The translations under genes and the position numbers were made by a program. DNA of 64,000 nt, taken from positions 1 through 64,000 of the IMG/VR virus record IMGVR_UViG_3300048625_000299. One strand, given 5' to 3'. Positions 24,684 to 38,007 of this stretch are shown piece after piece (within the stretch, counting starts at the first letter, position 1; each line of letters begins with the position of its first letter). The notes under the pieces are model-generated. The model worked only from the letters and a program-made list of their open reading frames with translations, did not search any database and was not told where the DNA came from.

Positions 24684-24790
24684 TGAGTCTGAGATAATTT
24701 TGCATTAGAGATCATCGAGTCTCTTAGCAGTAAAGGTTCTTTCACAATTTGTGGATGGTGGTTTCTGTAAGGGCTTGTTCTCTTACAGAG

Positions 24791-24918
24791 GCCATACCAA
24801 AATATGCTTACGCACATACTGCCGCAATTAGAGCGGTTGTTATCTGCGGTGGTTCTGACAGACTGCAAAAAGTCGACGGGTCAGCGTTGATGAACGTATG
24901 AGCATGTTTTGATATGGC
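24791..24918 (+). ncRNA. long-stem structured element S1
   Basis: GCCATACCAAAATATGCTTA / TGAGCATGTTTTGATATGGC terminal stem. Confidence 0.5.
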
Positions 24919-24921
24919 TAT

Positions 24922-24997
24922 GGTGTGTTCGTCTATCGGTTTAGGACGCTGCCCTTTCAAGGCGGAAAGACGAGTTCGATTCTCGTACGCACTACCA
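24922..24997 (+). tRNA. tRNA-Glu(TTC)
   Basis: Cloverleaf, TTCGA loop, CCA. Confidence 0.92.
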
Positions 24998-25119
24998 TTA
25001 ATTAAAATCTCTGTAAGCTCGGAGGCACAGTACATGCGTTATGTAACTATACTAATACGCCGTAATCGATCGTAAAGCGGTTGAGGTATAGCAAATAGTG
25101 CAGAGATTTTAATTAATGG
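24995..25119 (+). ncRNA. long-stem structured element S2
   Basis: CCATTAATTAAAATCTCTG / CAGAGATTTTAATTAATGG. Confidence 0.55.
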
Positions 25120-25123
25120 AAAT

Positions 25124-25200
25124 GCTTCGTTAGCTCAGTTGGTTAGAGCGCATGCCTGTCACGCATGAGGCCGTCGGTTCGAGCCCGATACGGGGCGCCA
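25124..25200 (+). tRNA. tRNA-Asp(GTC)
   Basis: Canonical cloverleaf, CCA. Confidence 0.95.
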
Positions 25201-25209
25201 AGTTATTTT

Positions 25210-25283
25210 ACCCGGATAGTTAAATGGTATAACGTGCGCTTGATAAGCGCTTATCGCAAGTTCGATTCTTGCTCTGGGTACCA
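25210..25283 (+). tRNA. tRNA-Ile(GAT)
   Basis: Cloverleaf, CCA. Confidence 0.9.
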
Positions 25284-25291
25284 AGTTTTAT

Positions 25292-25367
25292 ACCGTAGAG
25301 ATCCTCTGATGGGGATACCTCACTGTCTATGAGGATGTGGCGGGTTTGATTCCCGTCTACGGTGCCA
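25292..25367 (+). tRNA. tRNA-Asp(GTC), atypical
   Basis: All four arms pair; non-canonical D and T loops. Confidence 0.75.
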
Positions 25368-25371
25368 GTTT

Positions 25372-25442
25372 TAGAATAGTTACAGCAACACACAAAGAAC
25401 ACCAAACTTTTAATTTGACATGTTCGTCAACGCTATTCTGTT
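25372..25442 (+). ncRNA. stem-cassette RNA A (Lys-UUU anticodon-loop-like cargo)
   Basis: TAGAATAG-TTAC-AGCAA ... CTATTCTG-TT. Confidence 0.75.
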
Positions 25443-25448
25443 ATATTT

Positions 25449-25523
25449 GGGGACAGTAGTGGGCTACGGTTCTCCCTTGCAAGGAGGATGTCTAGAAGGA
25501 TTCGATTTCCTCGGTCTCCACCA
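25449..25523 (+). tRNA. tRNA-Ala(TGC), minimal D-arm
   Basis: G3:U70, TGC loop, CCA. Confidence 0.7.
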
Positions 25524-25532
25524 ATTTTTTAT

Positions 25533-25607
25533 ACTGCGTTCGACTTCAGGTGAGGTCATCACCCTTTCAAGGTGACTAGACGGGTTCGATACCCGTACGC
25601 AGTACCA
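25533..25607 (+). tRNA. tRNA-Glu(TTC)
   Basis: Cloverleaf, CCA. Confidence 0.9.
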
Positions 25608-25612
25608 GTTTT

Positions 25613-25687
25613 CGGTTGTAAGCTTTGATGGCGAAGTACCCGGCTCTTACCCGGATTAACGGAGTTCGATTCTCCGACGACCGACCA
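25613..25687 (+). tRNA. tRNA-Lys(CTT)
   Basis: Cloverleaf, CCA. Confidence 0.85.
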
Positions 25688-25691
25688 GTTT

Positions 25692-25813
25692 TAGGATACT
25701 TGCAGCAATGACTTAAAAGTCAGTAGGTTCGATTCCTACATTTGGAGCTTTCCAAATCCGTCGTAAGGTACGACAAACGATTGAAACTCGTTCAACTAAA
25801 AAGGTATCCTGTT
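25692..25813 (+). ncRNA. stem-cassette RNA B (permuted tRNA-Phe-like cargo)
   Basis: TAGGATAC-TTGC-AGCAA ... GTATCCTG-TT; cargo order V, T, acceptor, D, anticodon(GAA). Confidence 0.8.
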
Positions 25814-25821
25814 GTATTTGT

Positions 25822-25896
25822 AGGGGGCTTGTCGTCTGGTGATGACACTACGCTTTGACCGTAGGAAGATGAGTTCGATCCTCATGCCCCCCGCCA
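25822..25896 (+). tRNA. tRNA-Gln(TTG)
   Basis: Cloverleaf, CCA. Confidence 0.85.
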
Positions 25897-25929
25897 GTTT
25901 TTGTTTAACTAATTTAATGGAGGCAGTCT

Positions 25930-26064
25930 ATGAAAAAGACGAAACCGATCGTGCGCGAACGTAACTGCTTCGTTCGATTAGCACTATTCCGTAAAGCAGG
26001 ATCGCACCGCAAGTCTAACAAGGCATTGCGTAAAGCGATCAACCAATCATCGTTGGGTTTATAG
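25930..26064 (+). CDS. small basic protein (44 aa)
   Basis: GGAGG RBS; MKKTKPIVRERN...KAGSHRKSNK; stop lies inside tRNA-Lys. Confidence 0.6.
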   Translation: MKKTKPIVRERNCFVRLALFRKAGSHRKSNKALRKAINQSSLGL

Positions 26065-26131
26065 TTTAACGGCAAAAACATCTGGCTTTTAACCAGTAAG
26101 AGTCTCGGTTCGAATCCGAGTAGACCCACCA
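26055..26131 (+). tRNA. tRNA-Lys(TTT)
   Basis: Cloverleaf, CCA. Confidence 0.92.
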
Positions 26132-26210
26132 TATGAAAGCATACTACCGAAGTTGGTTCGGTTAGACAGGGAGATCCAATTGCCTATGTCGTTAGTGTGT
26201 TTTTATATGG
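26129..26210 (+). ncRNA. long-stem structured element S3
   Basis: CCATATGAAAGCATACTA / TAGTGTGTTTTTATATGG. Confidence 0.55.
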
Positions 26211-26273
26211 TACGTAATTTGAGTACAATGGTCACACGCCCTTGCTTAGATTACAAACGCCATAATAATTTAT

Positions 26274-26349
26274 TCCATCTTAGTATTCTCGGTGAGTACG
26301 CCCGGCTGTTAACCGGAGAAGGTTGGTTCGAATCCAACAGATGGAGCCA
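26274..26349 (+). tRNA. tRNA-Asn(GTT)
   Basis: Cloverleaf, CCA. Confidence 0.85.
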
Positions 26350-26354
26350 GTTAT

Positions 26355-26413
26355 GGGGCAAAAAGCGGATTCTGTCCAATGAATCTTTTGCAGCACACTG
26401 TAATGCCCCGCCA
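26355..26413 (+). ncRNA. 59-nt D-armless tRNA-like mini RNA
   Basis: GGGGCA/TGCCCC-GCCA acceptor plus two hairpins. Confidence 0.5.
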
Positions 26414-26417
26414 AATT

Positions 26418-26481
26418 TAGGATCCTTTCAGCAAAACTTATACTTTCACTTTTGGCTGTGAAAAGCAAAGCGGATCCTGTT
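26418..26481 (+). ncRNA. stem-cassette RNA C
   Basis: TAGGATCC-TTTC-AGCAA ... GGATCCTG-TT. Confidence 0.75.
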
Positions 26482-26487
26482 GAACAT

Positions 26488-26565
26488 GCCCACGTAGTGC
26501 AATTGGTAGGAGACAACGGTCTTAGAAGCCGAACAGTGTCGGTTCGAATCCGACCGTGGGCACCA
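26488..26565 (+). tRNA. tRNA-Leu(TAG), short variable loop
   Basis: Cloverleaf, A73, CCA. Confidence 0.88.
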
Positions 26566-26568
26566 AAT

Positions 26569-26637
26569 TTATACACAGATGTTGGTTCGATTCCAACCCT
26601 GATGAAGAGTAGCATAATATGGCAATGCAGTGTATAA
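26569..26637 (+). ncRNA. stand-alone permuted tRNA-elbow mimic
   Basis: TTATACAC / T-arm / short linker / D-arm / GTGTATAA. Confidence 0.55.
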
Positions 26638-26688
26638 TCCAAGCCTCGCGCTGACTTGTCGCGTATAATGAGATAAATTACAAGTCAC

Positions 26689-26791
26689 TTTTCTAGAGCA
26701 TATCGCGGCTGAGGCTAGGCCGTTATGTGGATCATAGCTGGGCCTTTCGGCTTGGTCGCCAGTTCAATTCTGGTAGATGTGTTCTAGAAAA
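26689..26791 (+). ncRNA. cloverleaf-like element S4 with extended terminal stem
   Basis: 16-bp closing stem, D-like arm, GCCAG-TTCAATT-CTGGT T-arm, no CCA. Confidence 0.5.
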
Positions 26792-26795
26792 GTTT

Positions 26796-26870
26796 GGGCT
26801 GATAGTGATAATGGGAGCACAGTGGCTTTGCAAGCCTCGGGTCGGGGTTCGATCCCCCGTCGGTCCACCA
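26796..26870 (+). tRNA. tRNA-Ala(TGC)
   Basis: G3:U70, CCA. Confidence 0.88.
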
Positions 26871-26879
26871 AATTTTAAT

Positions 26880-26956
26880 CCGTCCGTAGCACAATTGGAG
26901 AATGTTCCGTCCTACGAAGTCGAGAGGTGGGGGTTCGAATCCCTCCGGACGGACCA
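26880..26956 (+). tRNA. tRNA-Arg(ACG)
   Basis: Cloverleaf with weak anticodon stem, CCA. Confidence 0.82.
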
Positions 26957-27105
26957 TACTATAGTGTATTCTTCGTCATATGCGGGGTTTCAGGTTCCAC
27001 GTCAAATGTGCCAGAATGAGAATAGTCCTGCAGGTTAATGCTCAGGGTAACACATTAATACTTACAGACAGGTTGACACTTGTTTGGGAATGCATTATAA
27101 TATGG
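26954..27105 (+). ncRNA. long-stem structured element S5
   Basis: CCATACTATAGTGTATTCT / GGAATGCATTATAATATGG. Confidence 0.5.
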
Positions 27106-27110
27106 TTTAT

Positions 27111-27183
27111 GCGGGGTTAGTTTAGTGGTAAAACACTTTCCTTCCAAGTAAGAGTTGCGGGTTCGATTCCCGCACCCCGCTCC
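27111..27183 (+). tRNA. tRNA-Gly(TCC), no encoded CCA
   Basis: Canonical cloverleaf ending TCC-C. Confidence 0.9.
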
Positions 27184-27207
27184 CTTGAGTCGATGTCAAG
27201 ACTCGAA
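27182..27207 (+). repeat. 26-nt direct repeat, copy 1
   Basis: CCCTTGAGTCGATGTCAAGACTCGAA, identical to 28690-28715. Confidence 0.9.
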
Positions 27208-27223
27208 ACTTATAAATAAAAGT

Positions 27224-27763
27224 ATGGAAAAAACATACTATACAATTTATAAGATAACGAATCGGATTAATGGCAAGATCTATATTGGATCGCATAAGAC
27301 CAAAAATCTGAATGACAACTATATGGGTTCTGGAAAATACTTAAAGTATGCCCAAGACAAATATGGTATTGAAAAGTTTGAAAAAGAAATATTGTTCGTA
27401 TTTGATACGGCGCAAGAGATGTACGCTAAGGAAGCGGAAATTGTCAATGTTGAGTTCTTAGCTGAGCATAACACTTACAACATTAAAGTTGGAGGGTTTG
27501 GCGGTTGGGATCACATTAATAATGATGTAGAATTTCGTACGCAGAAAAATCAGCTAGCAAGGGCACGAGCTCAAGCTGCAGGGGCTTCGGATAAAGCAAA
27601 GTTATACAACACTGAACGGAGACGTCAGTATGATCTGAATCCAGCACGATGCGCTTCATGTAGCCAACCGCTTGATTTTTTAAAGCGCAAGAATAAATTC
27701 TGTGGGCATAGTTGTTCAGCTAAGTTGACCAACACCACTAGAGTTCGCAAATCGAACAAGTAA
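27224..27763 (+). CDS. GIY-YIG (Seg-like) homing endonuclease
   Basis: YTIYKITN...KIYIGSH, YMGSG, YN motif; late promoter at 27211. Confidence 0.9.
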   Translation: MEKTYYTIYKITNRINGKIYIGSHKTKNLNDNYMGSGKYLKYAQDKYGIEKFEKEILFVFDTAQEMYAKEAEIVNVEFLAEHNTYNIKVGGFGGWDHINNDVEFRTQKNQLARARAQAAGASDKAKLYNTERRRQYDLNPARCASCSQPLDFLKRKNKFCGHSCSAKLTNTTRVRKSNK

Positions 27764-27767
27764 GTTT

Positions 27768-27829
27768 TAGGATAGTTACCGCAATCAAAAAGCTAACTAT
27801 GGTTGTCTAGCGACAAAAGCTATCCTGTT
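27768..27829 (+). ncRNA. stem-cassette RNA D
   Basis: TAGGATAG-TTAC-CGCAA ... CTATCCTG-TT. Confidence 0.75.
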
Positions 27830-27836
27830 GATTAAT

Positions 27837-27918
27837 GGATGAGATGCTCTAATGGTAGGGCAGCGGGCTGTAACCCCGTGGCTTCGGCAAGTAGGTTCGA
27901 TCCCTACCTCATCCACCA
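27837..27918 (+). tRNA. tRNA-Tyr(GTA)
   Basis: Class II cloverleaf, CCA. Confidence 0.9.
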
Positions 27919-28104
27919 TTTAAGTGACCAGTTTCCGTAACAACTAGAGATGACTGGATCCATCATGATGAACAGTTACGGACGAAGCGTGGGAGTGGAA
28001 GAAGGTCTTGTTGTGTCTCCCGAAAATAAATGACGAAAGTCTTAGCGACAACGAGTAATATCAGTATAACCTAAGGGCGATGGCAAGCCTCTGATAGCCT
28101 TTAT

Positions 28105-28191
28105 GGACGTGTAGGAAAATTGGTAACCCCAGGAGACTGTAAATCTTCCGCCCGCAAGGCACTACTGGTTCGACTCCAGTCGCGTCCACCA
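28105..28191 (+). tRNA. tRNA-Tyr(GTA)
   Basis: Class II cloverleaf, CCA. Confidence 0.88.
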
Positions 28192-28193
28192 AA

Positions 28194-28376
28194 TTAATCG
28201 AATACAAATCTACAGTTGATTTGTTTTAACTGTCCGTCGAGTTTGAATTCAGTTTCGACTTTCGGATAGCAATCGGCAAATGTGCCAACGCAAGTAGACG
28301 TTTTAGTCTCTTTGTAAGGTTGACCATCAGCTAGCTTGTAAAGCAGTTTGAGGTTGTATTCATCATCATATGCCAT
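28194..28376 (-). CDS. small antisense-oriented protein (60 aa)
   Basis: GGAG upstream of ATG on the minus strand; exactly fills the gap between two tRNAs. Confidence 0.5.
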   Translation of the reverse strand: MAYDDEYNLKLLYKLADGQPYKETKTSTCVGTFADCYPKVETEFKLDGQLKQINCRFVFD

Positions 28377-28388
28377 AGAAATATTTAT

Positions 28389-28466
28389 CTCCGATTCGCC
28401 TAGTCTGGTATGGCACTTCGTTTGGGACGAAGAATAACGGGAGTTCAAATCTCTCATCGGAGACCA
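28389..28466 (+). tRNA. tRNA-Pro(TGG)
   Basis: Cloverleaf, CCA. Confidence 0.9.
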
Positions 28467-28618
28467 AGAATTAGTCGGAAAGCAAGAGCCGAAAAGTAAA
28501 TAGTAGGCGACCTAGCCACCTCGGTCGTCTTTGTAGTGTATACTGCGTCAGGGAGCCTGGAAGGGTAACTTGAGAAACACTGGGGTAAGAATCCCAATTG
28601 ATGGTGAGCGCAAATTTC

Positions 28619-28691
28619 CAGGGGGTATGATAGTGGTAGTCGCCGAGGTTTGGAACCTTGTAGTGGGAGTTCGATTCTCCCTCCCCTGACC
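28619..28691 (+). tRNA. tRNA-Pro(TGG), no encoded CCA
   Basis: Cloverleaf ending ACC-C. Confidence 0.85.
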
Positions 28692-28715
28692 CTTGAGTCG
28701 ATGTCAAGACTCGAA
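28690..28715 (+). repeat. 26-nt direct repeat, copy 2
   Basis: Identical to 27182-27207. Confidence 0.9.
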
Positions 28716-28726
28716 CGATTATAAAT

Positions 28727-29389
28727 ATGTGTATGTATTACACTGTTTATAAAACGACGAATAAGATTAATGGCAAGATCTATATTGGATCACATAAGAC
28801 CAAAAATCTTAATGATAATTACCTGGGTTCAGGTAAGTATTTGAAGCGTGCCATAGAAAAGTATGGAGTAGATTCTTTCACTAGGGAAATACTGTTCATA
28901 TTTGAAACAGCAGAGGAAATGTATGCTAAAGAGGCGGAGCTTGTGAACGCAGAGTTCCTAACTGAAGAAAATACATACAACCTCAAGGTTGGAGGTTTTG
29001 GTGGGTTTGACTATATAAATTCCAACCCCGAAAAATACCTAACGCCCAAGAGGCTTGCAGCGCTGATGCCTGGACATGAGTTGCAAAGGCGGCTGTGGGA
29101 AAAATATTATTCCGATCCTGCGTTTAGAGCCAAGCGCCAAGAGCAATCTAGACATGCTCTAAACGTAGCTAGAACAAAATCGCGTGCTCCCTTCAAAGGA
29201 CGCAAGCATTCGGATGTTGTAAAACAAAAAATAGCTGCAAAGGCTAGAGAAAGATCTGCAGATAATCCACAAGGAAACTCCCAGTATGGGACGATATGGA
29301 TTACAGATGGTGTTGAAAATAAGAAGATTAATAAAACTGATGTCTTACCAGATGGTTGGTATAGGGGCAGAGTTTTTAAAAAAGTATAA
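28727..29389 (+). CDS. GIY-YIG (Seg-like) homing endonuclease with NUMOD3-like segment
   Basis: YTVYKTTN...KIYIGSH; FKGRKHS; WITDG...GWYRGR; late promoter at 28720. Confidence 0.9.
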   Translation: MCMYYTVYKTTNKINGKIYIGSHKTKNLNDNYLGSGKYLKRAIEKYGVDSFTREILFIFETAEEMYAKEAELVNAEFLTEENTYNLKVGGFGGFDYINSNPEKYLTPKRLAALMPGHELQRRLWEKYYSDPAFRAKRQEQSRHALNVARTKSRAPFKGRKHSDVVKQKIAAKARERSADNPQGNSQYGTIWITDGVENKKINKTDVLPDGWYRGRVFKKV

Positions 29390-29390
29390 T

Positions 29391-29468
29391 GTCTGGGTGG
29401 CAGAGCGGCCCATTGCAACGGATTGCAAATCCGTAAAGTCGTCGGTTCAAATCCGACCCCAGATTCCA
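29391..29468 (+). tRNA. tRNA-Cys(GCA)
   Basis: U73, CCA. Confidence 0.9.
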
Positions 29469-29476
29469 ATTTTAAT

Positions 29477-29550
29477 GCGTGGTTAGTTTAATGGTAAAAT
29501 CAGACGTTGCCAACGTTTAGTTAAGGGTTCGATTCCCTTACCCCGCACCA
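29477..29550 (+). tRNA. tRNA-Gly(GCC)
   Basis: Cloverleaf, CCA. Confidence 0.88.
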
Positions 29551-29556
29551 GTTTAT

Positions 29557-29632
29557 GCTCCTTTCGTATAGTGATTTATTACATCGGTTTTGTAGTCCGA
29601 GAACAGCAGTTTGATTCTGCTAGGGAGCTCCA
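29557..29632 (+). tRNA. tRNA-Thr(TGT), atypical
   Basis: Cloverleaf, TTTGA T-loop, CCA. Confidence 0.78.
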
Positions 29633-29640
29633 GTTTATTT

Positions 29641-29716
29641 GCTCGCGAAGTATTAGTTGGTGGTATGCCGCTTTCGTAATGCGGAGGATCGGGTTCGAGG
29701 CCTGACGTGAGCACCA
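29641..29716 (+). tRNA. tRNA-Thr(CGT)
   Basis: Cloverleaf, CCA. Confidence 0.8.
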
Positions 29717-29720
29717 AAGT

Positions 29721-29940
29721 TTTGTAAGTGTCAGCAAGTGCAGTCACGCTAGTGATGGTAAGTTCGAACTACCTAACTAGTAAAAGGGGACGGGTTCAAC
29801 TCCCGGCTGATCGGAAGATCGGTGCAGATTGGTTGCTAACTGGACAGGTACCCAAGTGATATCCATCGCGTGACGGGGTCAGGCTAGGCGGCCGGTAGGT
29901 CCTGACTAAATCTACGATAAACGTGACGTAGGCTTACAAA
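29721..29940 (+). ncRNA. 220-nt structured RNA X with two T-loop-like hairpins
   Basis: TTTGTAAG-TGTC-AGCAA ... CTTACAAA; GTCACG/CGTGAC helix. Confidence 0.55.
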
Positions 29941-29949
29941 TTTAATTAT

Positions 29950-30024
29950 GGAGTAGTTAGTTTAGTGGCAAAACCGCGGGTTGTGATTCCGCTATCACGG
30001 GTTCGATTCCCGTACTTCTCCCCA
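29950..30024 (+). tRNA. tRNA-His(GTG)
   Basis: G-1:C73, CCA. Confidence 0.9.
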
Positions 30025-30141
30025 TATGAAAGTATTCTTGGTATAAGTCAAAGCGGAAGAAGAGACCCACGTGGATGCATACGCAACGGTCTCAGAGCTC
30101 AGTCTCCTTCTAGGCCTGCATTCGAGAGTGCTTTTATATGG
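30022..30141 (+). ncRNA. long-stem structured element S6
   Basis: CCATATGAAAGTATTCT / AGAGTGCTTTTATATGG. Confidence 0.55.
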
Positions 30142-30146
30142 CATAT

Positions 30147-30234
30147 GCCTCGGTGTTGGAATTTGGTAGACAAGCTAGAATGAGAGTCTAGTATCCGAAA
30201 GGATGTGTGGGTTCGATTCCCATCTGAGGCACCA
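30147..30234 (+). tRNA. tRNA-Leu(GAG)
   Basis: Class II cloverleaf, CCA. Confidence 0.9.
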
Positions 30235-30249
30235 ATTAAAAAGTACATT

Positions 30250-30325
30250 GCCTGTGTAGCTCCAATGGTAGAGCAGTGGATTGAAAATCCATGTGTTGCT
30301 GGTTCGAGTCCAGCCATAGGCACCA
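30250..30325 (+). tRNA. tRNA-Phe(GAA)
   Basis: Canonical, CCA. Confidence 0.95.
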
Positions 30326-30336
30326 AGTTTGACCAT

Positions 30337-30456
30337 TAGGTTCATTTCAGCAATCAAAATAATCTTTCTTAGAAAAAGAGGGTCTGGGTTCGAATCCCAG
30401 CGCGGAGTTGGTCTTCCGTGTGGTGTAAGGGTAGCACGAAAAAAGTTGAACCTGTT
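30337..30456 (+). ncRNA. stem-cassette RNA E (permuted tRNA, TAG anticodon)
   Basis: TAGGTTCA-TTTC-AGCAA ... TGAACCTG-TT; cargo order anticodon, T, acceptor, D. Confidence 0.82.
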
Positions 30457-30470
30457 AAAATAAATGCAAT

Positions 30471-30547
30471 GGCTCAGTAGTTCCAATTGGCAGAACGGCG
30501 GATTCCAAATCCGCGTGTTGGAGGTTCGAATCCTTCCTGGGTCGCCA
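30471..30547 (+). tRNA. tRNA-Trp(CCA)
   Basis: Canonical, G73, CCA; U11-A24. Confidence 0.95.
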
Positions 30548-30554
30548 AAAGTTT

Positions 30555-30656
30555 TAGGATAGTTACAGCAAAACAAAACGCTTGTCATTGGTTGACAATT
30601 TGCCTTCTAAGCAAACCTAGCAGGTTCAATTCCTGCAGCAAAACAACTATCCTGTT
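30555..30656 (+). ncRNA. stem-cassette RNA F (acceptor-less tRNA-Arg(TCT)-like cargo)
   Basis: TAGGATAG-TTAC-AGCAA ... CTATCCTG-TT; D, anticodon and T arms in normal order. Confidence 0.8.
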
Positions 30657-30665
30657 GATTATCAC

Positions 30666-30756
30666 GGAGAGCGAAGCAGACAGGCGCGCTGCCACCGCCT
30701 TGAAAGCGGCTGGATCCTGAAAGGGATTGGATTTCGAGTATACCCGCTCTCCGCCA
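30666..30756 (+). tRNA. tRNA-Ser(TGA), atypical T-arm
   Basis: Class II, G73, CCA. Confidence 0.8.
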
Positions 30757-30763
30757 AAATTAT

Positions 30764-30878
30764 GTCGCGATGGTGTAATGGTAGCACGCTATAAAAGGTG
30801 ATCCTGATTAGGATACGTGCAGCATACATTTTCCACTGTCAATGGAGATGCCCAGGTTCGATTCCTGGTCGCGACGCC
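30764..30878 (+). tRNA. tRNA-Asp(GTC) interrupted by a 42-nt insertion (30789-30830)
   Basis: GTCGCGA/TCGCGAC acceptor with D, anticodon and T arms intact; insert carries cassette motifs in swapped order. Confidence 0.75.
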
Positions 30879-30883
30879 TCTTT

Positions 30884-30989
30884 TAGGATGAATGCAGCAA
30901 CATAAAAACTCTTCCACCATTCAGGGAGGCCGGCCCGCAGGGGGCATGTCGTTGGGTTCGAGTCCCGGTCTTAGACACATCATCCTGTT
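30884..30989 (+). ncRNA. stem-cassette RNA H (T-arm-containing cargo)
   Basis: TAGGATGA-ATGC-AGCAA ... TCATCCTG-TT. Confidence 0.78.
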
Positions 30990-30998
30990 ATTCAATGT

Positions 30999-31074
30999 TC
31001 CCTCTTCGCCAAGTTGGTAAGGCATCGGATTTTGATTCCGACATTCGGTGGTTCGAGTCCATCAGGGGGAGCCA
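30999..31074 (+). tRNA. tRNA-Gln(TTG)
   Basis: Canonical, CCA. Confidence 0.93.
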
Positions 31075-31221
31075 AGTTTTTGCAGTCTTAGCCTGGAGCT
31101 AGGGTAAAGGGTGTTGCGGGTGGCATCGAGACTCTACGGAGATTCGAGCGTTAAAGTTATCACCGATAAACATCGTAGCGCAACTTCAATCAATATGTGG
31201 AGCCTGCTGCAGAATTAATAT

Positions 31222-31310
31222 GGAAGATACAGCTGTGTGGTCACAGCATCCGCCTGGAACGCGGACGGTTGGTTCTGCTGGCCGGAGTTCGACTCTCCTA
31301 TCTTCCTCCA
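31222..31310 (+). tRNA. tRNA-Ser(GGA)
   Basis: Class II, CCA. Confidence 0.82.
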
Positions 31311-31434
31311 TATAAAAGCTCTTTGAGCAGCTACACTGGAGTTCATCAAGTAACCGCCAAGTCGACTACGCGGTAAACGTTGCCAGGAAGTAGGGCTGCC
31401 ATGGATTCAAGTACCGCAGAGAGCCTCTATATGG
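31308..31434 (+). ncRNA. long-stem structured element S7
   Basis: CCATATAAAAGCTCT / AGAGCCTCTATATGG. Confidence 0.55.
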
Positions 31435-31520
31435 ACGATTACCTAGTCAGGGACTAGCACTGATTCGAAACCAGTTGGATTCAGAAATGGGTTGGGGTTC
31501 GATACCTCAGTCGTCCGCCA
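31433..31520 (+). tRNA. tRNA-Ser(CGA)
   Basis: Class II, G73, CCA. Confidence 0.85.
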
Positions 31521-31542
31521 TTCACAAATTAAGGGGATACCG

Positions 31543-31677
31543 ATGAAACGAAAAGATGTATTCGATAAGGCATATGGTAGTGTCCCCCATGAAGTTGGCT
31601 TCAATGTCGACCTAGATATTAATGTATTCAGAGGATTCAGGTATTATTACTTGAAGATGATACGTTTCTTTAGATAG
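31543..31677 (+). CDS. small hypothetical protein
   Basis: AAGGGG RBS, 44 aa. Confidence 0.55.
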   Translation: MKRKDVFDKAYGSVPHEVGFNVDLDINVFRGFRYYYLKMIRFFR

Positions 31678-31684
31678 GAGCATT

Positions 31685-31933
31685 ATGTCAAATGAGCAAC
31701 ACAAAGAACAACATTCCAAACGTCTGCATCAAAAAGAGACGCATGTTGCAAAGCAAGTAAAGATCGCTAAGGCGTATGGCATATCTGTTAAAGAGCCACA
31801 CAAGCTAGCAAAGCATAATGCAATGAATTGTGGAGATCCAAACTGCTTGATGTGTATGAATCCCCGCAAAGCATTTAATGAGAAGACGATTCAAGAACGT
31901 CGATTTGATCAGCCTTTAGCTCAAGGAGAGTAA
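31685..31933 (+). CDS. conserved phage hypothetical protein (CxxxxCxxC)
   Basis: AGGAG RBS; CGDPNCLMCMNPRK. Confidence 0.7.
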   Translation: MSNEQHKEQHSKRLHQKETHVAKQVKIAKAYGISVKEPHKLAKHNAMNCGDPNCLMCMNPRKAFNEKTIQERRFDQPLAQGE

Positions 31934-31934
31934 A

Positions 31935-32609
31935 ATGAAAAAGGTAATCGAGATTCGCGCTGCTGAAGGCGGCGACGATAGTAAATTATTCGTAAAGGAC
32001 CTAGCGCAAAGCTACGTCAAGTTCGCAGACCGCAAGGGCTGAACTACCCGCCTGATAGGTGAGTACCTCGGAGAGCTTCATATTGAAGTCAAGGGGTCTG
32101 ACTTATCCGGACTAGAAAACGAAGCAGGCGGGCATCGAATCCAAAGAGTTCCTCCGACGGAACGAAAAGGTAGAGTACATACTAGCACCGTCACGGTCGC
32201 TATCATTGATAGCGCATCCGAGATCAAGACGGAATCTATACCAGACCATGAATTAAAAGTGGAGTGGTATAGCGGGACGGGGGCTGGTGGGCAACATCGA
32301 AACAAGCATCAAAACAGTTGTAGACTAACACACATTCCAACTGGAATAGTAACTACTGCACAATGTCGTAGTAGAGAGAATAGTCTGAACGAAGCACGAT
32401 CGTCATTGACACATCGTGTGAACTCGTTGACTAAGGATGCGTTTCATAGTAATGTAGCCAGTAACAGAAAACAACAAGTTGGTTCTGGGATGCGTGGCGA
32501 TAAGATCAGGACATATCGTTTCCAAGATGATCGTGTGCAAGACCATAGAACCGATAAAGTAGTCAGCTTGAAGAAAGTGATGGCTGGCGCGTTTGATCTG
32601 TTTTGGTAA
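31935..32609 (+). CDS. class I peptide release factor-like protein with in-frame TGA at codon 36
   Basis: EIRAAEGG, HRIQRVPPTERKGRVHTS, GAGGQHRNK, KIRTY in one frame across TGA 32040-32042. Confidence 0.85.
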
Positions 32610-32628
32610 ACACAACAAAGGAAGTATA

Positions 32629-32820
32629 ATGGCAAATCGTATTAACGAGTTTGAAGAAGTAGTTTCAGCAATGCGTGCTGATTTCGAAAAGTTCTATGAT
32701 AAAGAAACTAATGCTGCTGGCGCTCGCGTCCGTAAGCATTGCCAAGCGCTGGCTGTTCTCTGTAAGGAAGTTCGTAAGGACGTCACTGAAGTGAAAGCTG
32801 CACGCGCTGCTGCAAAGTAA
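32629..32820 (+). CDS. histone H1-like (Hc1-type) small protein
   Basis: KFYDKETNAAGARVRK...KEVRKDV. Confidence 0.65.
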   Translation: MANRINEFEEVVSAMRADFEKFYDKETNAAGARVRKHCQALAVLCKEVRKDVTEVKAARAAAK

Positions 32821-32905
32821 TTCTGCTTGCAAGCTGATCTCGGTGCTCCCGTTCTCCCGAGTTAGAATAGCTGATAATGTTTCAGTAAGACGGGGCCAAA
32901 TTTAA

Positions 32906-32995
32906 GGTGCGGTCCCATAATGGTATTGGAGCGGATTGCTAATCCGTCGGTCGGCGAAAGCCGGCTTCTGAGTTCGAGTCTCAGTCGCACCGCCA
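32906..32995 (+). tRNA. tRNA-Ser(GCT)
   Basis: Class II, CCA. Confidence 0.9.
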
Positions 32996-33000
32996 GTTCT

Positions 33001-33090
33001 CCCGCTGTAGCTCAAGGAGAGCAGGGGGTCTTATAAGCCCTTAATCTAGATAAGGTCCAGGATGTGGTTCGATTCCACACAGCGGGACCA
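33001..33090 (+). tRNA. tRNA-Ile(TAT) with long variable region
   Basis: CTTATAA loop, A73, CCA. Confidence 0.8.
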
Positions 33091-33097
33091 AAAGTTT

Positions 33098-33300
33098 TAG
33101 GATCCATGCAGCAACATAAAATGCATTGAAAGCCTCGTGTTGGTGGTGCAAGTCCACCCTCCCTCACTAAGGGCACTTTATGGAGTGACCCGCCATACTA
33201 CTAAAGGATCGCAACCTGTAGTAATATCCAACGTATGGTATTGTGCCCTTAGTGAGGGAGTAGCTCAAGTAGTAGAGCAGAGTAAAAAGCGGATCCTGTT
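33098..33300 (+). ncRNA. stem-cassette RNA I (YrlA-like permuted module with 18-bp acceptor)
   Basis: TAGGATCC-ATGC-AGCAA ... GGATCCTG-TT; T-arm, CTCCCTCACTAAGGGCAC/GTGCCCTTAGTGAGGGAG, D-arm. Confidence 0.82.
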
Positions 33301-33307
33301 GTTTAAG

Positions 33308-33385
33308 GCCCAGGTAGTGCAATTGGTAGGAGACAACGGTTTCAAACGCCGTACAGTGTGGGTTCGAATCCCATCCTGGGCACCA
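33308..33385 (+). tRNA. tRNA-Leu(CAA), short variable loop
   Basis: Cloverleaf, CCA. Confidence 0.88.
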
Positions 33386-33400
33386 AATTGAAAGTTAATT

Positions 33401-33625
33401 ATGTTTAAGGTTTACTGGACAAGTGATGGTGGTGTACATGCAAGTACGTTCGACGGCTTGTCGGAAGCTATTAAAGAATGTGAAGTGTTACGTAAGGATG
33501 GAATGACCTTTGTTACGATGGTATCAGAGAATCCAAACTCAGTAGGCAAGCCTGGAGTAGATGCTGTCGTCGATGGCAAATGTCCAGACGGTGTAGATTA
33601 CACTTGGAAGAAGAGAAGAATATGA
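33401..33625 (+). CDS. conserved hypothetical protein
   Basis: FVTMVSENPNSVGKPGVD...YTWKKRR. Confidence 0.7.
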   Translation: MFKVYWTSDGGVHASTFDGLSEAIKECEVLRKDGMTFVTMVSENPNSVGKPGVDAVVDGKCPDGVDYTWKKRRI

Positions 33626-34329
33626 TCGGTCTAATTGGAAGAGGCGTTGTGGGTGGCGCAATCGAAAACGCCTACACTAAATTAAATCGTCCGCTTGTCG
33701 TTGTTGATAGGGGCGATGATTTCCGCGCACTCGACCAATGTACCATGATTTGGGTAGCTGTCCCCGAGTGGGAAATTGCTAATGTAGCAAGACAGGTCAC
33801 CAACCGCAATGCGCTGTATGTGATTAAGAGCACTGCAGTACCTGCTCAATTCGAAACGCTATTCAAGCGATTTGTATATGTGCCTGAATTTTTGACAGCA
33901 AAGAATGCCAACGCTGATTTCTTCAACCCACCGCTGCTTCCGATCGGAACAGATAATCAGCAAGATGCTGACATGGTGTTGGATGAGATGTTTGCATTGA
34001 ATGTATACTGCTATCATGCTAGATATGTGACAGTCGCTGAAGCGTCTGCCATTAAGTACTACGCAAATTCGTTCCTAGCAACAAAAGTGATATTCAACAA
34101 TCAGTTTGCGAACTATTGTGAAGACATGGGAGTTGAGTGGAATAAGATTGCAAGCGTTCTTGGTGAGGATACCCGACTCGGACATACGCACTGGCAAGTG
34201 CCTGGGCCTGATGGGCTGCCAGGATATGGGGGAGCATGCTTTCCGAAAGATGTCCGTGCATTGGTACATGCTACAGATCGGTTGACATTATTAGAACAAG
34301 TCGATATAATAAACAAATCGATGAGATAA
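33622..34329 (+). CDS. UDP-glucose/GDP-mannose dehydrogenase-like protein
   Basis: GRGVVG, IKST, PEFL, KYYANSFLATKV, GYGGACFPKD. Confidence 0.88.
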   Translation: MIGLIGRGVVGGAIENAYTKLNRPLVVVDRGDDFRALDQCTMIWVAVPEWEIANVARQVTNRNALYVIKSTAVPAQFETLFKRFVYVPEFLTAKNANADFFNPPLLPIGTDNQQDADMVLDEMFALNVYCYHARYVTVAEASAIKYYANSFLATKVIFNNQFANYCEDMGVEWNKIASVLGEDTRLGHTHWQVPGPDGLPGYGGACFPKDVRALVHATDRLTLLEQVDIINKSMR

Positions 34330-34333
34330 CAAT

Positions 34334-34408
34334 CTGGCGTTCGTTCAACGGATAGGACATTTCTCTTCTAAAGAAATTATGGGGGTTCGATTCCCTCACG
34401 CCGGACCA
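34334..34408 (+). tRNA. tRNA-Arg(TCT)
   Basis: Cloverleaf, CCA. Confidence 0.92.
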
Positions 34409-34413
34409 AATTT

Positions 34414-34488
34414 GCGTTCATAGTTCAACGGATAGAATTCAGTCTTCCGAAGTCTGAGATTGTGGTTCAATTCCACATGGACGCACCA
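34414..34488 (+). tRNA. tRNA-Arg(CCG)
   Basis: Cloverleaf, CCA. Confidence 0.88.
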
Positions 34489-34577
34489 TAATAAAACGTA
34501 AAAGCGGTGGTATGGGCCGGATCAACGAGCGAGTGCTTCCTACATGCAGGAGCGGCGATTGGTACGTTTTATTATGG
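34486..34577 (+). ncRNA. long-stem structured element S8
   Basis: CCATAATAAAACGTA / TACGTTTTATTATGG. Confidence 0.55.
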
Positions 34578-37671: not shown

Positions 37672-37688
37672 AACGCCAACATAGAATT

Positions 37689-37926
37689 TAGAGTAGATTC
37701 AGCAAACCAAAAAATCCAGGAGTAACGTCCTGATTACTACCCCCTACCGTACCCCGAAAAGGGTTTCCGAAAGGATGGAGGGAATGCGTCAACCTAGTAA
37801 TAGGTTGGCTTTGTAGTCTTGCGAGATCAAGGATCGGGCGCCAACGATTGGCGATAGGGTCATGGGGCTATGGCAAGTGCCAGATGTGGATGACCAGAAA
37901 ATAATTACTGTCCCGCCTACTCTGTT
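37689..37926 (+). ncRNA. stem-cassette RNA J (long multi-hairpin cargo)
   Basis: TAGAGTAG-ATTC-AGCAA ... CTACTCTG-TT. Confidence 0.78.
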
Positions 37927-37931
37927 GTTTT

Positions 37932-37988
37932 TAGGTTAAGTTCCGCACAACAATTTCTATTCATAAAAGAGAAAAAGTTTAACCTGTT
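37932..37988 (+). ncRNA. stem-cassette RNA K
   Basis: TAGGTTAA-GTTC-CGCA ... TTAACCTG-TT, 19 nt before the ATG. Confidence 0.75.
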
Positions 37989-38007
37989 GATTGAAAAGGA
38001 GTTCATT

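What the first reader, a model, noticed from the sequence alone, without database searches (positions are those of the whole stretch)
24791..34577. Family of CCAT...ATGG long-stem elements that start at the CCA of the upstream tRNA
Seen: seven spacers (24791-24918, 24995-25119, 26129-26210, 26954-27105, 30022-30141, 31308-31434, 34486-34577) are closed by 15-20-bp AU-rich stems with G-U pairs, typically CCATAT-RAAAGYAT...RTGYTTT-ATATGG, around unrelated structured interiors. In six, the stem begins with the tRNA's own CCA. In S7 the closing GG is also the first two bases of the next tRNA. Inference: either a second carrier scaffold for small RNAs (RNase III-like release) or a switch that sequesters CCA ends and controls maturation.
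Basis: partly seen in the sequence, partly recalled or inferred. Interest (0 to 1): 0.6.

Follow-up and report, generated by a model that had tools for sequence, protein, structure and literature searches.

The report
Long-stem RNA cassettes on tRNA ends
In the tRNA gene array of an uncultured freshwater T4-like phage, seven inserts fold into helices of about 20 base pairs that start with the CCA end of the preceding tRNA and enclose variable RNA. The family is real, common in related phages and apparently undescribed, but its job, most likely control or processing of tRNA 3' ends, is inferred and not shown.

Summary
All seven spacers close with 15-24-bp helices on the tRNA strand. Across the 235-kb genome, CCAT/ATGG-anchored stems of 15 or more pairs occur only in the array.

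Related IMG/VR phages carry at least 74 distinct elements of this kind. The helix starts at the tRNA's CCA, usually pairs the discriminator too, and ends about 20-21 bp in. G-U pairs outnumber A-C mismatches 95:16, so selection acts on the tRNA-strand RNA. The elements sit preferentially behind tRNA-Glu(UUC), Gln(UUG) and Lys(UUU).

One subfamily keeps an invariant stem, including an A-C mismatch, around unrelated 28-66-nt interiors. Other cargos (S2-type, S6-type) are conserved, covarying RNAs that appear behind different tRNAs in different phages. Elements are gained and lost at the CCA boundary.

A Ro60-like gene lies nearby, but complete genomes have the elements without it, and KVP40 has the gene without the elements. 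A Y-RNA role is therefore unlikely. No Rfam family or known ribozyme matches.

Best reading (confidence about 0.4): a cis-acting module that sequesters the NCCA end and is removed by a dsRNA endonuclease, with mostly tolerated inserts. The kind is known (processing stems); the variant is new.

The parts
24764..24789 (+). Leader hairpin (10-bp stem) that abuts S1 and stands in for an upstream tRNA. It is followed by GG-CCA.
   Evidence: MFE fold of 24698-24923. The same layout (hairpin, then element, then tRNA) lies behind the Ro60-like gene in at least 15 relatives.
24792..24917 (+). S1: 126-nt element with a 22-position closing stem (17 WC, 3 G-U, 2 A-C). tRNA-Glu(UUC) starts 4 nt after it.
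   Evidence: (z -4.5). Homologue in L009 624-749.
24995..25119 (+). S2: 125-nt element. Its 21-bp stem starts at the CCA of tRNA-Glu(UUC) (24922-24997). tRNA-Asp starts 4 nt after it. The cargo is a conserved structured RNA ('S2-type').
   Evidence: z -5.9. Seven-sequence alignment A2: 96.6% of cells paired, 17 of 38 pairs with double changes, 0 of 500 shuffles reach the observed value.
26129..26210 (+). S3: 82-nt element starting at the CCA of tRNA-Lys(UUU) (26055-26131). The stem has 4 G-U pairs.
   Evidence: (z -5.0). The same cargo lies behind the Ro60-like gene in L024 and L052. The orthologous site in L009 holds an unrelated 133-nt cargo.
26954..27105 (+). S4: 152-nt element starting at the CCA of tRNA-Arg(ACG) (26880-26956). 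tRNA-Gly(UCC) starts 5 nt after it.
   Evidence: Absent in L009 and in a relative in run X5 (joint 26963->27109). The cargo lies behind the Ro60-like gene in L022, L027 and L069.
27073..27101 (+). Perfect sigma-70 consensus promoter (TTGACA, 17 nt, TATAAT) inside S4. The -10 hexamer lies in the 3' arm, placed to start transcription just before tRNA-Gly(UCC).
   Evidence: It is the only such case among 54 elements.
30022..30141 (+). S5: 120-nt element starting at the CCA of tRNA-His (29951-30024), with a 20-bp stem holding 5 G-U pairs. tRNA-Leu(GAG) starts 5 nt after it.
   Evidence: (z -3.6). A co-occurring variant lacks S5 plus tRNA-Leu, joined exactly after the CCA (joint 30024->30248).
31308..31434 (+). 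S6: 127-nt element starting at the CCA of tRNA-Ser(GGA) (31223-31310). Its last GG is the start of tRNA-Ser(CGA) (31433). The cargo is a conserved structured RNA ('S6-type').
   Evidence: 11 of 37 pairs with double changes. The same cargo lies behind Leu-UAA, Lys-UUU, Phe-GAA and Leu-CAA tRNAs in relatives.
34486..34577 (+). S7: 92-nt element starting at the CCA of tRNA-Arg(CCG) (34414-34488), with a 15-bp all-Watson-Crick stem. The next tRNA is 174 nt away.
   Evidence: (z -3.5). The interior (64 nt) is identical in L001 and L009; a related cargo lies behind tRNA-Glu in L026.

Best explanation
The elements are cis-acting modules of the polycistronic tRNA transcript.

Anatomy: a helix of about 20 bp, AU-rich at its base, pairs the 3'-NCCA of a tRNA (or of a surrogate hairpin) with a downstream UGG(U) arm and encloses an insert of 30-200 nt.

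Shown:
- the helix is selected at the RNA level on the tRNA strand;
- it begins at the CCA, usually takes in the discriminator, and has a preferred length of 20-21 bp;
- it is attached preferentially to tRNA-Glu(UUC), Gln(UUG) and Lys(UUU);
- it is gained, lost and re-equipped with different inserts among related phages.

Inferred: in the primary transcript the helix hides the CCA end, which both aminoacylation and RNase P contact need. The tRNA therefore stays an inactive, exonuclease-resistant precursor until a double-strand-specific endonuclease cuts the helix; a host RNase III-type enzyme is the obvious candidate. The A/U-rich, C-poor remainder behind the CCA is then trimmed by 3' exonucleases, and RNase P removes the other arm as the leader of the next tRNA.

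Most inserts are tolerated filler. A few (S2-type, S6-type) have become conserved structured RNAs that would be set free by the same cuts.
For: - Closing helices are real.
- In 1208 tRNAs of related loci, long stems pile up at offsets -2 to +1 of the CCA.
- In 58 distinct CCA:UGG-anchored elements, positions 4-18 hold 730 WC, 95 G-U, 16 A-C and 29 other pairs, with many pair types per position. The discriminator is paired in 83%.
- Stem length peaks at 20-21 bp.
- tRNA preference: Glu-UUC 19/38, Gln-UUG 11/25, Lys-UUU 7/23, against 53/753 overall. An independent set drawn with a 16-mer of the 3' arm gives Lys 36, Gln 9, Glu 7 of 58.
- 28 distinct Lys-linked elements share an invariant stem, including an A-C mismatch at position 8, around unrelated interiors of 28-66 nt. 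In that subfamily the function lies in the stem.
- Positions 4-11 behind the CCA are 2% C.
- Where no tRNA precedes, a hairpin directly abuts the helix.
- Indel boundaries lie exactly at or near the CCA.
- RNA-library contigs show no peak over S3-S6, while other spacers peak 10-20-fold.
Against: - No end-mapping or cleavage data exist; only contigs could be laid, not reads.
- The phage has no RNase III gene and the host is unknown.
- S2-type and S6-type interiors are conserved with covariation. At least some cargos therefore do something, and the helix might only be their clamp.
- In about half of the elements the 3' arm is more than 20 nt from the next tRNA.
- S4 carries a perfect promoter, and S6 pairs slightly better on the minus strand.
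- The tRNA preference comes from related genomes and is partly inherited synteny.
Confidence: 0.4

Rival explanations
1. Carrier scaffold. The helix is only a stabilising clamp, and the interiors are trans-acting small RNAs (regulators, decoys or protein sponges) cut out of the tRNA transcript by tRNA-end processing.
For: S2-type and S6-type cargos are conserved, with compensatory changes in internal helices and conserved unpaired motifs. The same cargo is found behind five different tRNAs. Cargos are exchanged inside a constant outer stem at the site behind the Ro60-like gene.
Against: The largest subfamily has unrelated interiors in an invariant stem. A clamp would not need to use the tRNA's own CCA and discriminator, nor prefer three tRNAs. 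No accumulation is seen in RNA-library contigs.
Confidence: 0.25
2. Selfish or neutral palindromic cassettes. They spread and persist in tRNA arrays by recombination between their similar arms, helped by the homing endonucleases of the array, and have no function for the phage.
For: Presence/absence polymorphism among close relatives. The same cargo appears at different junctions. Many elements share arm sequences that could serve as recombination substrates. Two Seg-like GIY-YIG genes in the array are themselves polymorphic.
Against: The strong G-U over A-C asymmetry and the compensatory changes show selection for pairing on one RNA strand. Stem length is conserved, as is an A-C mismatch. A position behind tRNA-Glu is occupied in most genomes despite cargo turnover. 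No target-site duplication was seen.
Confidence: 0.12
3. Y-RNA-like partners of the phage's Ro60-like protein (window 37987-39441). The constant stem binds the protein ring and the variable loop recruits effectors.
For: - The protein folds like Ro60: all 13 Foldseek matches in the PDB with E at or below 0.001 are Ro60/TROVE structures (best E 2.5e-8, TM about 0.57).
- The elements share the Y-RNA layout of a long terminal stem plus a large loop.
- They lie on the same strand 3-13 kb upstream of the gene.
- Elements of this type lie 30-77 nt behind the gene in at least 15 relatives.
Against: - Double dissociation. Four genomes that CheckV rates 100% complete (G002, G003, G005, G008) carry the elements but have no Ro60-like gene. 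KVP40, and relatives whose protein is 64% identical or less, have the gene but no such elements.
- No GNCGAAN0-1G motif or bulged helix is present.
- Rfam YrlA does not match.
Confidence: 0.07
4. A DNA-level feature: hairpins or cruciforms in single-stranded DNA that serve recombination or replication, or promoter cassettes.
For: G-T pairs are also tolerated in DNA hairpins. S4 contains a perfect promoter. TATAAATA follows four of the elements behind the Ro60-like gene.
Against: All elements have the orientation of the tRNAs and start at the transcribed CCA. A promoter is found in only 1 of 54 elements. Covariation extends to internal helices of the cargos.
Confidence: 0.04

Closest known systems
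RNase III processing stems that flank 16S and 23S rRNA in bacterial rRNA operons, and the T7 early-mRNA R1.1-type signals (own knowledge)
   Same: Sequences on both sides of an embedded RNA pair into a helix of about two turns within a polycistronic stable-RNA transcript. AU-rich helices with wobble pairs or mismatches are typical substrates.
   Different: Here the 5' arm is the functional CCA end of a tRNA, the enclosed RNA is small and often unconserved, and cleavage has not been shown.
Y RNAs / YrlA (PMC4201824; Thermus phage phiLo Yrl1/2, PMC12135203)
   Same: 80-250-nt RNAs with a long stem made of the two ends around a large variable loop, several per genome, on the same strand as and near a Ro60-like gene.
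   Different: No GNCGAA motif or bulged helix, no tRNA-like domain in S1-S7, no Rfam match, and no co-occurrence with the Ro60-like gene across genomes.
T4 species 1 and 2 stable RNAs (rnaC, rnaD) in the T4 tRNA cluster
   Same: Small non-tRNA RNAs encoded in the tRNA gene cluster of a T4-like phage, directly behind tRNA-Arg.
   Different: rnaC folds as a tRNA-like RNA with a T-arm. Neither RNA has a 20-bp closing helix that uses the upstream CCA, and there is no sequence similarity.
tRNA-miRNA chimeras (TMERs) of murine gammaherpesvirus 68 (own knowledge)
   Same: A viral tRNA-like unit is followed immediately by long hairpins, so tRNA 3'-end processing defines the hairpin's 5' end.
   Different: TMERs belong to a eukaryotic virus, use RNase Z and Dicer, and their hairpins do not pair with the CCA. 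Nothing comparable is known in bacteria.
NCCA:UGGN pairing in T-box riboswitches, and CCA:GGU pairing with RNase P RNA loop L15 (own knowledge)
   Same: The tRNA's 3' NCCA is read by Watson-Crick pairing to a UGG(N) tract.
   Different: There the pairing is in trans and 3-4 bp long. Here it is in cis and is the base of a 20-bp helix.

Membership tests
Y RNA / YrlA (Rfam RF02553) | Long stem formed by the 5' and 3' ends around a large internal loop, about 80-130 nt | tested here: met
   definition from PMC4201824
Y RNA / YrlA (Rfam RF02553) | Encoded within a few kb of a Ro60/TROVE gene, on the same strand | tested here: met
   The Ro60-like fold of 37987-39441 is shown. Elements lie 3.4-13 kb upstream in the window and 30-77 nt downstream in at least 15 relatives.
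Y RNA / YrlA (Rfam RF02553) | Co-occurrence with a Ro60 gene across genomes | tested here: not met
   G002, G003, G005 and G008 (100% complete by CheckV) have the elements but no match to the protein or to PF25043. KVP40 has the gene but no elements. Arrays whose Ro60-like protein is 64% identical or less have none.
Y RNA / YrlA (Rfam RF02553) | GNCGAAN0-1G motif or bulged Ro-binding helix in the stem | tested here: not met
   None of the 13 motif matches in 24-40 kb lies in S1-S7. The stems are near-perfect helices.
Y RNA / YrlA (Rfam RF02553) | tRNA-like domain (T and D arms) in the loop; covariance-model match | tested here: not met
   No RF02553 match reaches the gathering score. Only 7 of 120 interiors hold a T-arm-like hairpin.
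Y RNA / YrlA (Rfam RF02553) | Binds Ro60 | not testable with these tools
   Needs EMSA or a pull-down.
RNase III processing stem | Helix of about two turns formed by sequences that flank an RNA in a polycistronic transcript | tested here: met
   Stem length peaks at 20-21 bp, plus the discriminator pair.
RNase III processing stem | Cleaved by RNase III; the enzyme is available in the infected cell | not testable with these tools
   No PF14622 match in the phage; host unknown; only contigs of the RNA runs were available.
Known self-cleaving ribozymes (HDV-like/theta, hammerhead, twister, pistol, hatchet) | Match to the family model; nested double pseudoknot or conserved catalytic core | tested here: not met
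   cmscan at E up to 1 over 23.5-38.5 kb finds only tRNA-related and chance matches. The 5' arm pairs continuously with the 3' end, which is not the HDV-like topology (the topology argument rests on own knowledge).
MITE / terminal-inverted-repeat transposon | Terminal inverted repeats | tested here: met
MITE / terminal-inverted-repeat transposon | Target-site duplication; near-identical copies within a genome; complementarity alike on both strands | tested here: not met
   The joints have no shared letters at their sides. Interiors within the genome are unrelated. G-U to A-C is 95:16.
T4 species 1/2 stable RNAs | Similarity in sequence or fold to rnaC or rnaD | tested here: not met

The most novel reading that the evidence does not exclude
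The constant CCA-anchored helix is a display scaffold. Fast-changing loops of 30-65 nt, swapped by recombination inside the stem, would act as decoys or guides in the arms race over exactly those tRNAs (Lys-UUU, Gln-UUG, Glu-UUC) that U-specific anticodon nucleases attack. Each vulnerable phage tRNA would then be made together with a variable protective RNA, and the tRNA 3' end would serve as the cassette's insertion and processing site.
Probability: 0.1. Interest if true: 0.9.

Novelty: new variant of a known kind. Interest (0 to 1): 0.62.

Why it matters
Phage tRNA arrays are usually read as plain codon-supply or anti-defence gene sets. Here a widespread family (more than 120 IMG/VR contigs hold one arm variant alone) ties the CCA end of selected tRNAs into a conserved 20-bp helix.

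If the helix delays or gates maturation, it would be a new layer of control over phage tRNA supply. It would concern precisely the Lys, Gln and Glu tRNAs that anticodon nucleases are known to target.

If the cargos are released, the array is also a production line for small RNAs and a natural counterpart of the engineered 'tRNA scaffold' used to express RNAs in bacteria.

The work also gives a clean negative result: these RNAs are not obligate partners of the phage Ro60-like proteins, whose RNA partners are still being sought (Bas63 gp130, bioRxiv 10.1101/2024.10.10.617714).

Tried and rejected
- Rfam. At E up to 1 over the array, only tRNAs and chance matches were found. Four other phages with the Ro60-like gene have no YrlA match either.
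- Y-RNA/Ro60 partner idea. I pursued it through a fold of the protein (the single-sequence model failed with pLDDT 42; the alignment-based model reached pLDDT 76.8), Foldseek, the literature, a motif scan, synteny and co-occurrence. It was demoted by the double dissociation.
- T4 rnaC and rnaD are not alike.
- Phage-encoded RNase III and CCA-adding enzyme are both absent.
- Promoter-cassette idea: only S4 carries a promoter.
- tRNA-fragment origin of the cargos: only 7 of 120 interiors have a T-arm-like hairpin.
- Close cultured relatives: none in the phage collection. megablast finds only single tRNAs, the DNA polymerase is at most 51% identical and the Ro60-like protein at most 48%.
- RNA evidence. 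The runs are held as contigs only, so no ends, strand or levels could be read.
- One paper search was badly phrased and gave nothing.
- The Tyr-Tyr spacer and the other highly covered spacers have no or few homologues and were not pursued.

Full report
CONTEXT. The window is the first 64 kb of a 234,864-bp IMG/VR virus record with direct terminal repeats and 45% G+C. It encodes T4-type portal, capsid, UvsW and DNA polymerase proteins. The polymerase is at most 51% identical to those of cyanomyoviruses. The DNA occurs in freshwater metagenomes and metatranscriptomes, and there is no close cultured relative. Between 24.7 and 37.6 kb lies a tRNA array: 40 genes by ARAGORN, plus further tRNA-model hits that ARAGORN either missed (for example 31223-31306) or parsed differently (30764-30876). 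All are on the + strand, behind several sigma-70-like promoters at 24.2-24.7 kb.

THE OBSERVATION. Each of the seven spacers folds with its two ends paired. Stems run 15-24 positions; pooled, they hold 117 Watson-Crick, 19 G-U, 5 A-C and 5 other pairs. Six have MFE z-scores of -3.1 to -5.9. CCAT/ATGG-anchored stems of 15 or more pairs occur nowhere else in the genome. Of only nine unanchored stems with 19 or more pairs on the + strand of the whole genome, five are these elements. The interiors of the seven are unrelated to each other.
- S2 to S7 begin with the CCA of a tRNA. For S6 that tRNA is a tRNA-Ser(GGA) that ARAGORN missed.
- S1 begins with a CCA that follows a 10-bp hairpin near the start of the array.
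- The overlap of the closing GG with the next tRNA belongs to 31308-31434, not to 34486-34577.

THE FAMILY IN RELATIVES. Two neighbouring proteins were used to fetch related IMG/VR loci: 18 with the DUF7873 protein and 65 with the Ro60-like protein. Most of the latter carry arrays of 20-34 tRNAs.
- Over 1208 tRNAs, long stems pile up at offsets -2 to +1 of the CCA.
- I found 74 distinct elements, 58 of them anchored CCA:UGG.
- At stem positions 4-18 there are 730 Watson-Crick, 95 G-U, 16 A-C and 29 other pairs. Most positions show three to five pair types.
- The six-fold excess of G-U over A-C means the pairing is selected on the tRNA strand, that is, in the transcript.
- The discriminator is paired in 83% of elements (A-U 64%, G-U 19%), and pairing fades beyond position 19-20.
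- Stem length peaks at 20-21 bp.
- The base of the helix is A/U-rich. Positions 4-11 of the 5' arm are only 2% C.
- A common consensus is CCAUAU-NN-AAACACAYU paired with AGUGUGUUU-NN-AUAUGG(U). S2-type stems have quite different sequences and keep only the pairing.

WHICH tRNAs. In 28 non-redundant arrays the elements follow tRNA-Glu(UUC) in 19 of 38 cases, tRNA-Gln(UUG) in 11 of 25 and tRNA-Lys(UUU) in 7 of 23. The overall rate is 53 of 753, and it is zero for 18 of the 30 tRNA species seen at least five times. As an independent sample I searched one 16-nt variant of the 3' arm. In the 80 loci returned, 81 of 92 matches have a partner arm of 15 or more pairs. Of those, 58 start exactly at a tRNA CCA: Lys-UUU 36, Gln-UUG 9, Glu-UUC 7. 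These genomes are related, so part of the preference is inherited synteny. The cargo behind a given tRNA nevertheless differs from phage to phage.

CARGOS AND TURNOVER. Two behaviours are seen.
(a) Constant stem, unrelated interior. Twenty-eight distinct elements behind tRNA-Lys(UUU) share a practically invariant 17-bp stem, including an A-C mismatch at position 8. Their interiors are 28-66 nt long and unrelated.
(b) Conserved cargo, variable context.
- S2-type has 7 sequences and 38 pairs. 96.6% of cells are paired, 17 pairs show changes on both sides, 0 of 500 shuffles reach the observed value, and slid controls pair only 34-41%.
- S6-type has 11 of 37 pairs with double changes.
- S6-type lies behind Ser-GGA in the window, Leu-UAA in L009 and L001, Lys-UUU in L041 and L043, Phe-GAA in L083 and Leu-CAA in L084.
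- S3- and S4-type cargos lie behind the Ro60-like gene in other phages.
Close relatives differ by presence or absence.
- L009 lacks S4 and has another cargo at the S3 site.
- Contigs of public runs show a form without S4 (joint 26963->27109).
- Another form has tRNA-His joined, exactly after its CCA, to the spacer before tRNA-Phe. It lacks S5 and tRNA-Leu (joint 30024->30248).

THE Ro60 LEAD. The protein at 37987-39441 matches Pfam DUF2828 plus DUF7788 and PHROG 850, 'RNA-binding protein'. Its alignment-based model (pLDDT 76.8) matches Ro60 structures, including that of Thermus phage phiLo (E 2.5e-8, TM about 0.57). Homologues occur in 709 phage records and are typically next to tRNA arrays, as in KVP40. 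Y RNAs have the same general layout as the elements.

In at least 15 distinct relatives an element of this type lies 30-77 nt behind the gene, preceded by a 9-bp hairpin and usually followed by a tRNA. The background rate of such stems is about 0.02 per kb.

The link fails on co-occurrence:
- Arrays whose Ro60-like protein is 64% identical or less have no elements, and neither does KVP40.
- Four genomes that CheckV rates 100% complete carry bona fide elements behind Glu, Lys, Ser or Leu tRNAs. None has a match to the protein or to PF25043, whereas a fifth genome served as a positive control.
- The YrlA motif GNCGAAN0-1G is absent from S1-S7, and Rfam's YrlA model does not match.
I conclude that the gene and the elements are independent tenants of the tRNA region.

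OTHER TESTS.
- No Rfam family or ribozyme model matches.
- T4's rnaC and rnaD are different.
- The phage has no RNase III or CCA-adding enzyme gene.
- S4 alone contains a perfect sigma-70 promoter, with its -10 in the 3' arm.
- In the RNA-library contigs of run X2, depth peaks 10-20-fold over other spacers (27.8-28.2, 28.4-28.6, 29.6-30.0 and 31.0-31.2 kb). One fragment, 29734-29875, is bounded by adaptor sequence.
- The bins holding S3-S6 stay at the level of neighbouring ORFs. This is weak evidence, because contig depth is an average and DNA may be present in the library.

MECHANISM (INFERRED). Four things are constant: an NCCA at the left edge, a helix of two turns, an A/U-rich and C-poor base, and attachment to particular tRNAs. 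The interior is not constant. This points to a function at the tRNA 3' end.

In the primary transcript the CCA, and usually N73, are base-paired. They are then unavailable to aminoacyl-tRNA synthetases and to the CCA-binding loop of RNase P, and 3' exonucleases cannot pass the helix (established properties of these enzymes; own knowledge).

Release needs an endonuclease. A helix of 20-22 bp with wobble pairs is the classical RNase III substrate. After a cut the short A/U-rich tail would be trimmed back to CCA, and RNase P would remove the other arm.

Whether this serves timing, dosage, protection of the precursor or release of the cargo cannot be told from sequence.

NOVELTY. Full-text searches found no description of such elements. 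Papers on phage Ro60 homologues propose Y-like RNAs or tRNA genes as partners, but not these. The kind, processing stems and tRNA-linked hairpins, is known. The CCA-anchored, modular, tRNA-specific variant is new.

LIMITS. All relatives are uncultured contigs. Counts of elements depend on a gapless stem finder that allows at most one mismatch, and on ARAGORN calls. No raw reads were available. The host is unknown.

Noticed in passing
window 25368-25450, 25688-25822, 26413-26487, 30548-30660, 30880-30998, 33091-33307, 37687-37790 (approximate): A second spacer family. Behind CCA-(A)GUUUU comes a stem UAGGAU-NNNN with a conserved CAGCAA, closed by NNNN-AUCCUGUUG. It often encloses T-arm-like hairpins. 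It occurs in relatives whose Ro60-like protein is 63% identical or more.
   Followed up: partly
window 37987-39441: A Ro60/TROVE-like protein (DUF2828 plus DUF7788, PHROG 850) lies just behind the array. Homologues occur in 709 phage records, typically next to tRNA arrays, for example in KVP40 and Cronobacter phage S13. Its RNA partner remains open.
   Followed up: yes
window 30764-30876; L088 3519-3631, 3642-3762, 5316-5428; L091 7874-7994, 8004-8116; L089 7732-7845; L090 10349-10461: Oversized tRNA-like genes of 113-121 nt (tRNA-model matches with an insert of about 40 nt) recur near the Ro60-like gene in distant phages. They are candidates for the protein's Y-like partner.
   Followed up: partly
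window 31935-32610: An ORF with PCRF and RF-1 domains (class-I release factor-like, GGQ motif) lies inside the tRNA array and has an in-frame TGA at codon 36. ARAGORN calls a tRNA with anticodon CUA in relatives L022, L024 and L069.
   Followed up: partly
window 27224-27763 and 28727-29389: Two Seg-like GIY-YIG homing-endonuclease ORFs, each directly behind a tRNA (Gly-UCC, Pro-UGG), share the same 26-nt leader. Both are absent from relatives in runs X3 and X5 (joints 27183->27816 and 28691->29389).
   Followed up: partly
window 27073-27101 and 34282-34310: Two perfect 12-of-12 sigma-70 consensus promoters lie on the + strand inside the array. One is within S4, the other is before tRNA-Arg(UCU).
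   Followed up: partly
window 27789-28186, 28386-28584, 29580-29977, 30973-31171: In the metatranscriptome contigs of run X2, depth over these non-tRNA spacers is 3-20 times that of neighbouring stretches. Adaptor sequence bounds a fragment at 29734-29875 and marks a start at 28483. These are probably abundant stable RNAs.
   Followed up: partly
window 27916-28104: The spacer between the two tRNA-Tyr genes also starts at the CCA. Its stem is bulged and imperfect, and the spacer contains two GNCGAA(N)G motifs. It is absent from L009 and from relatives in X3 and X5 (joint 27918->28100), and it has no homologue in the fetched loci.
   Followed up: partly
window 25291-25364, 25823-25893, 31223-31310: tRNA or tRNA-like genes found by the Rfam models but not by ARAGORN. 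The last is a tRNA-Ser(GGA).
   Followed up: yes
L022 2802-2901, L023 5597-5699, L026 300-405 and others; L001 2671-2745, L026 1800-1903: Two further long-stem families occur in relatives. One is about 100 nt long, with arms like GAAUUCUUUGGGGUG, between tRNA-Lys(UUU) and tRNA-Phe. In the other, the 3' arm pairs with eight bases of a tRNA-like 3' end (CUCCUCCA...UGGAGGAG).
   Followed up: no
L089 1758-2158 (Synechococcus phage BUCT-ZZ01): A permuted tmRNA gene lies about 4 kb upstream of that phage's Ro60-like gene.
   Followed up: no
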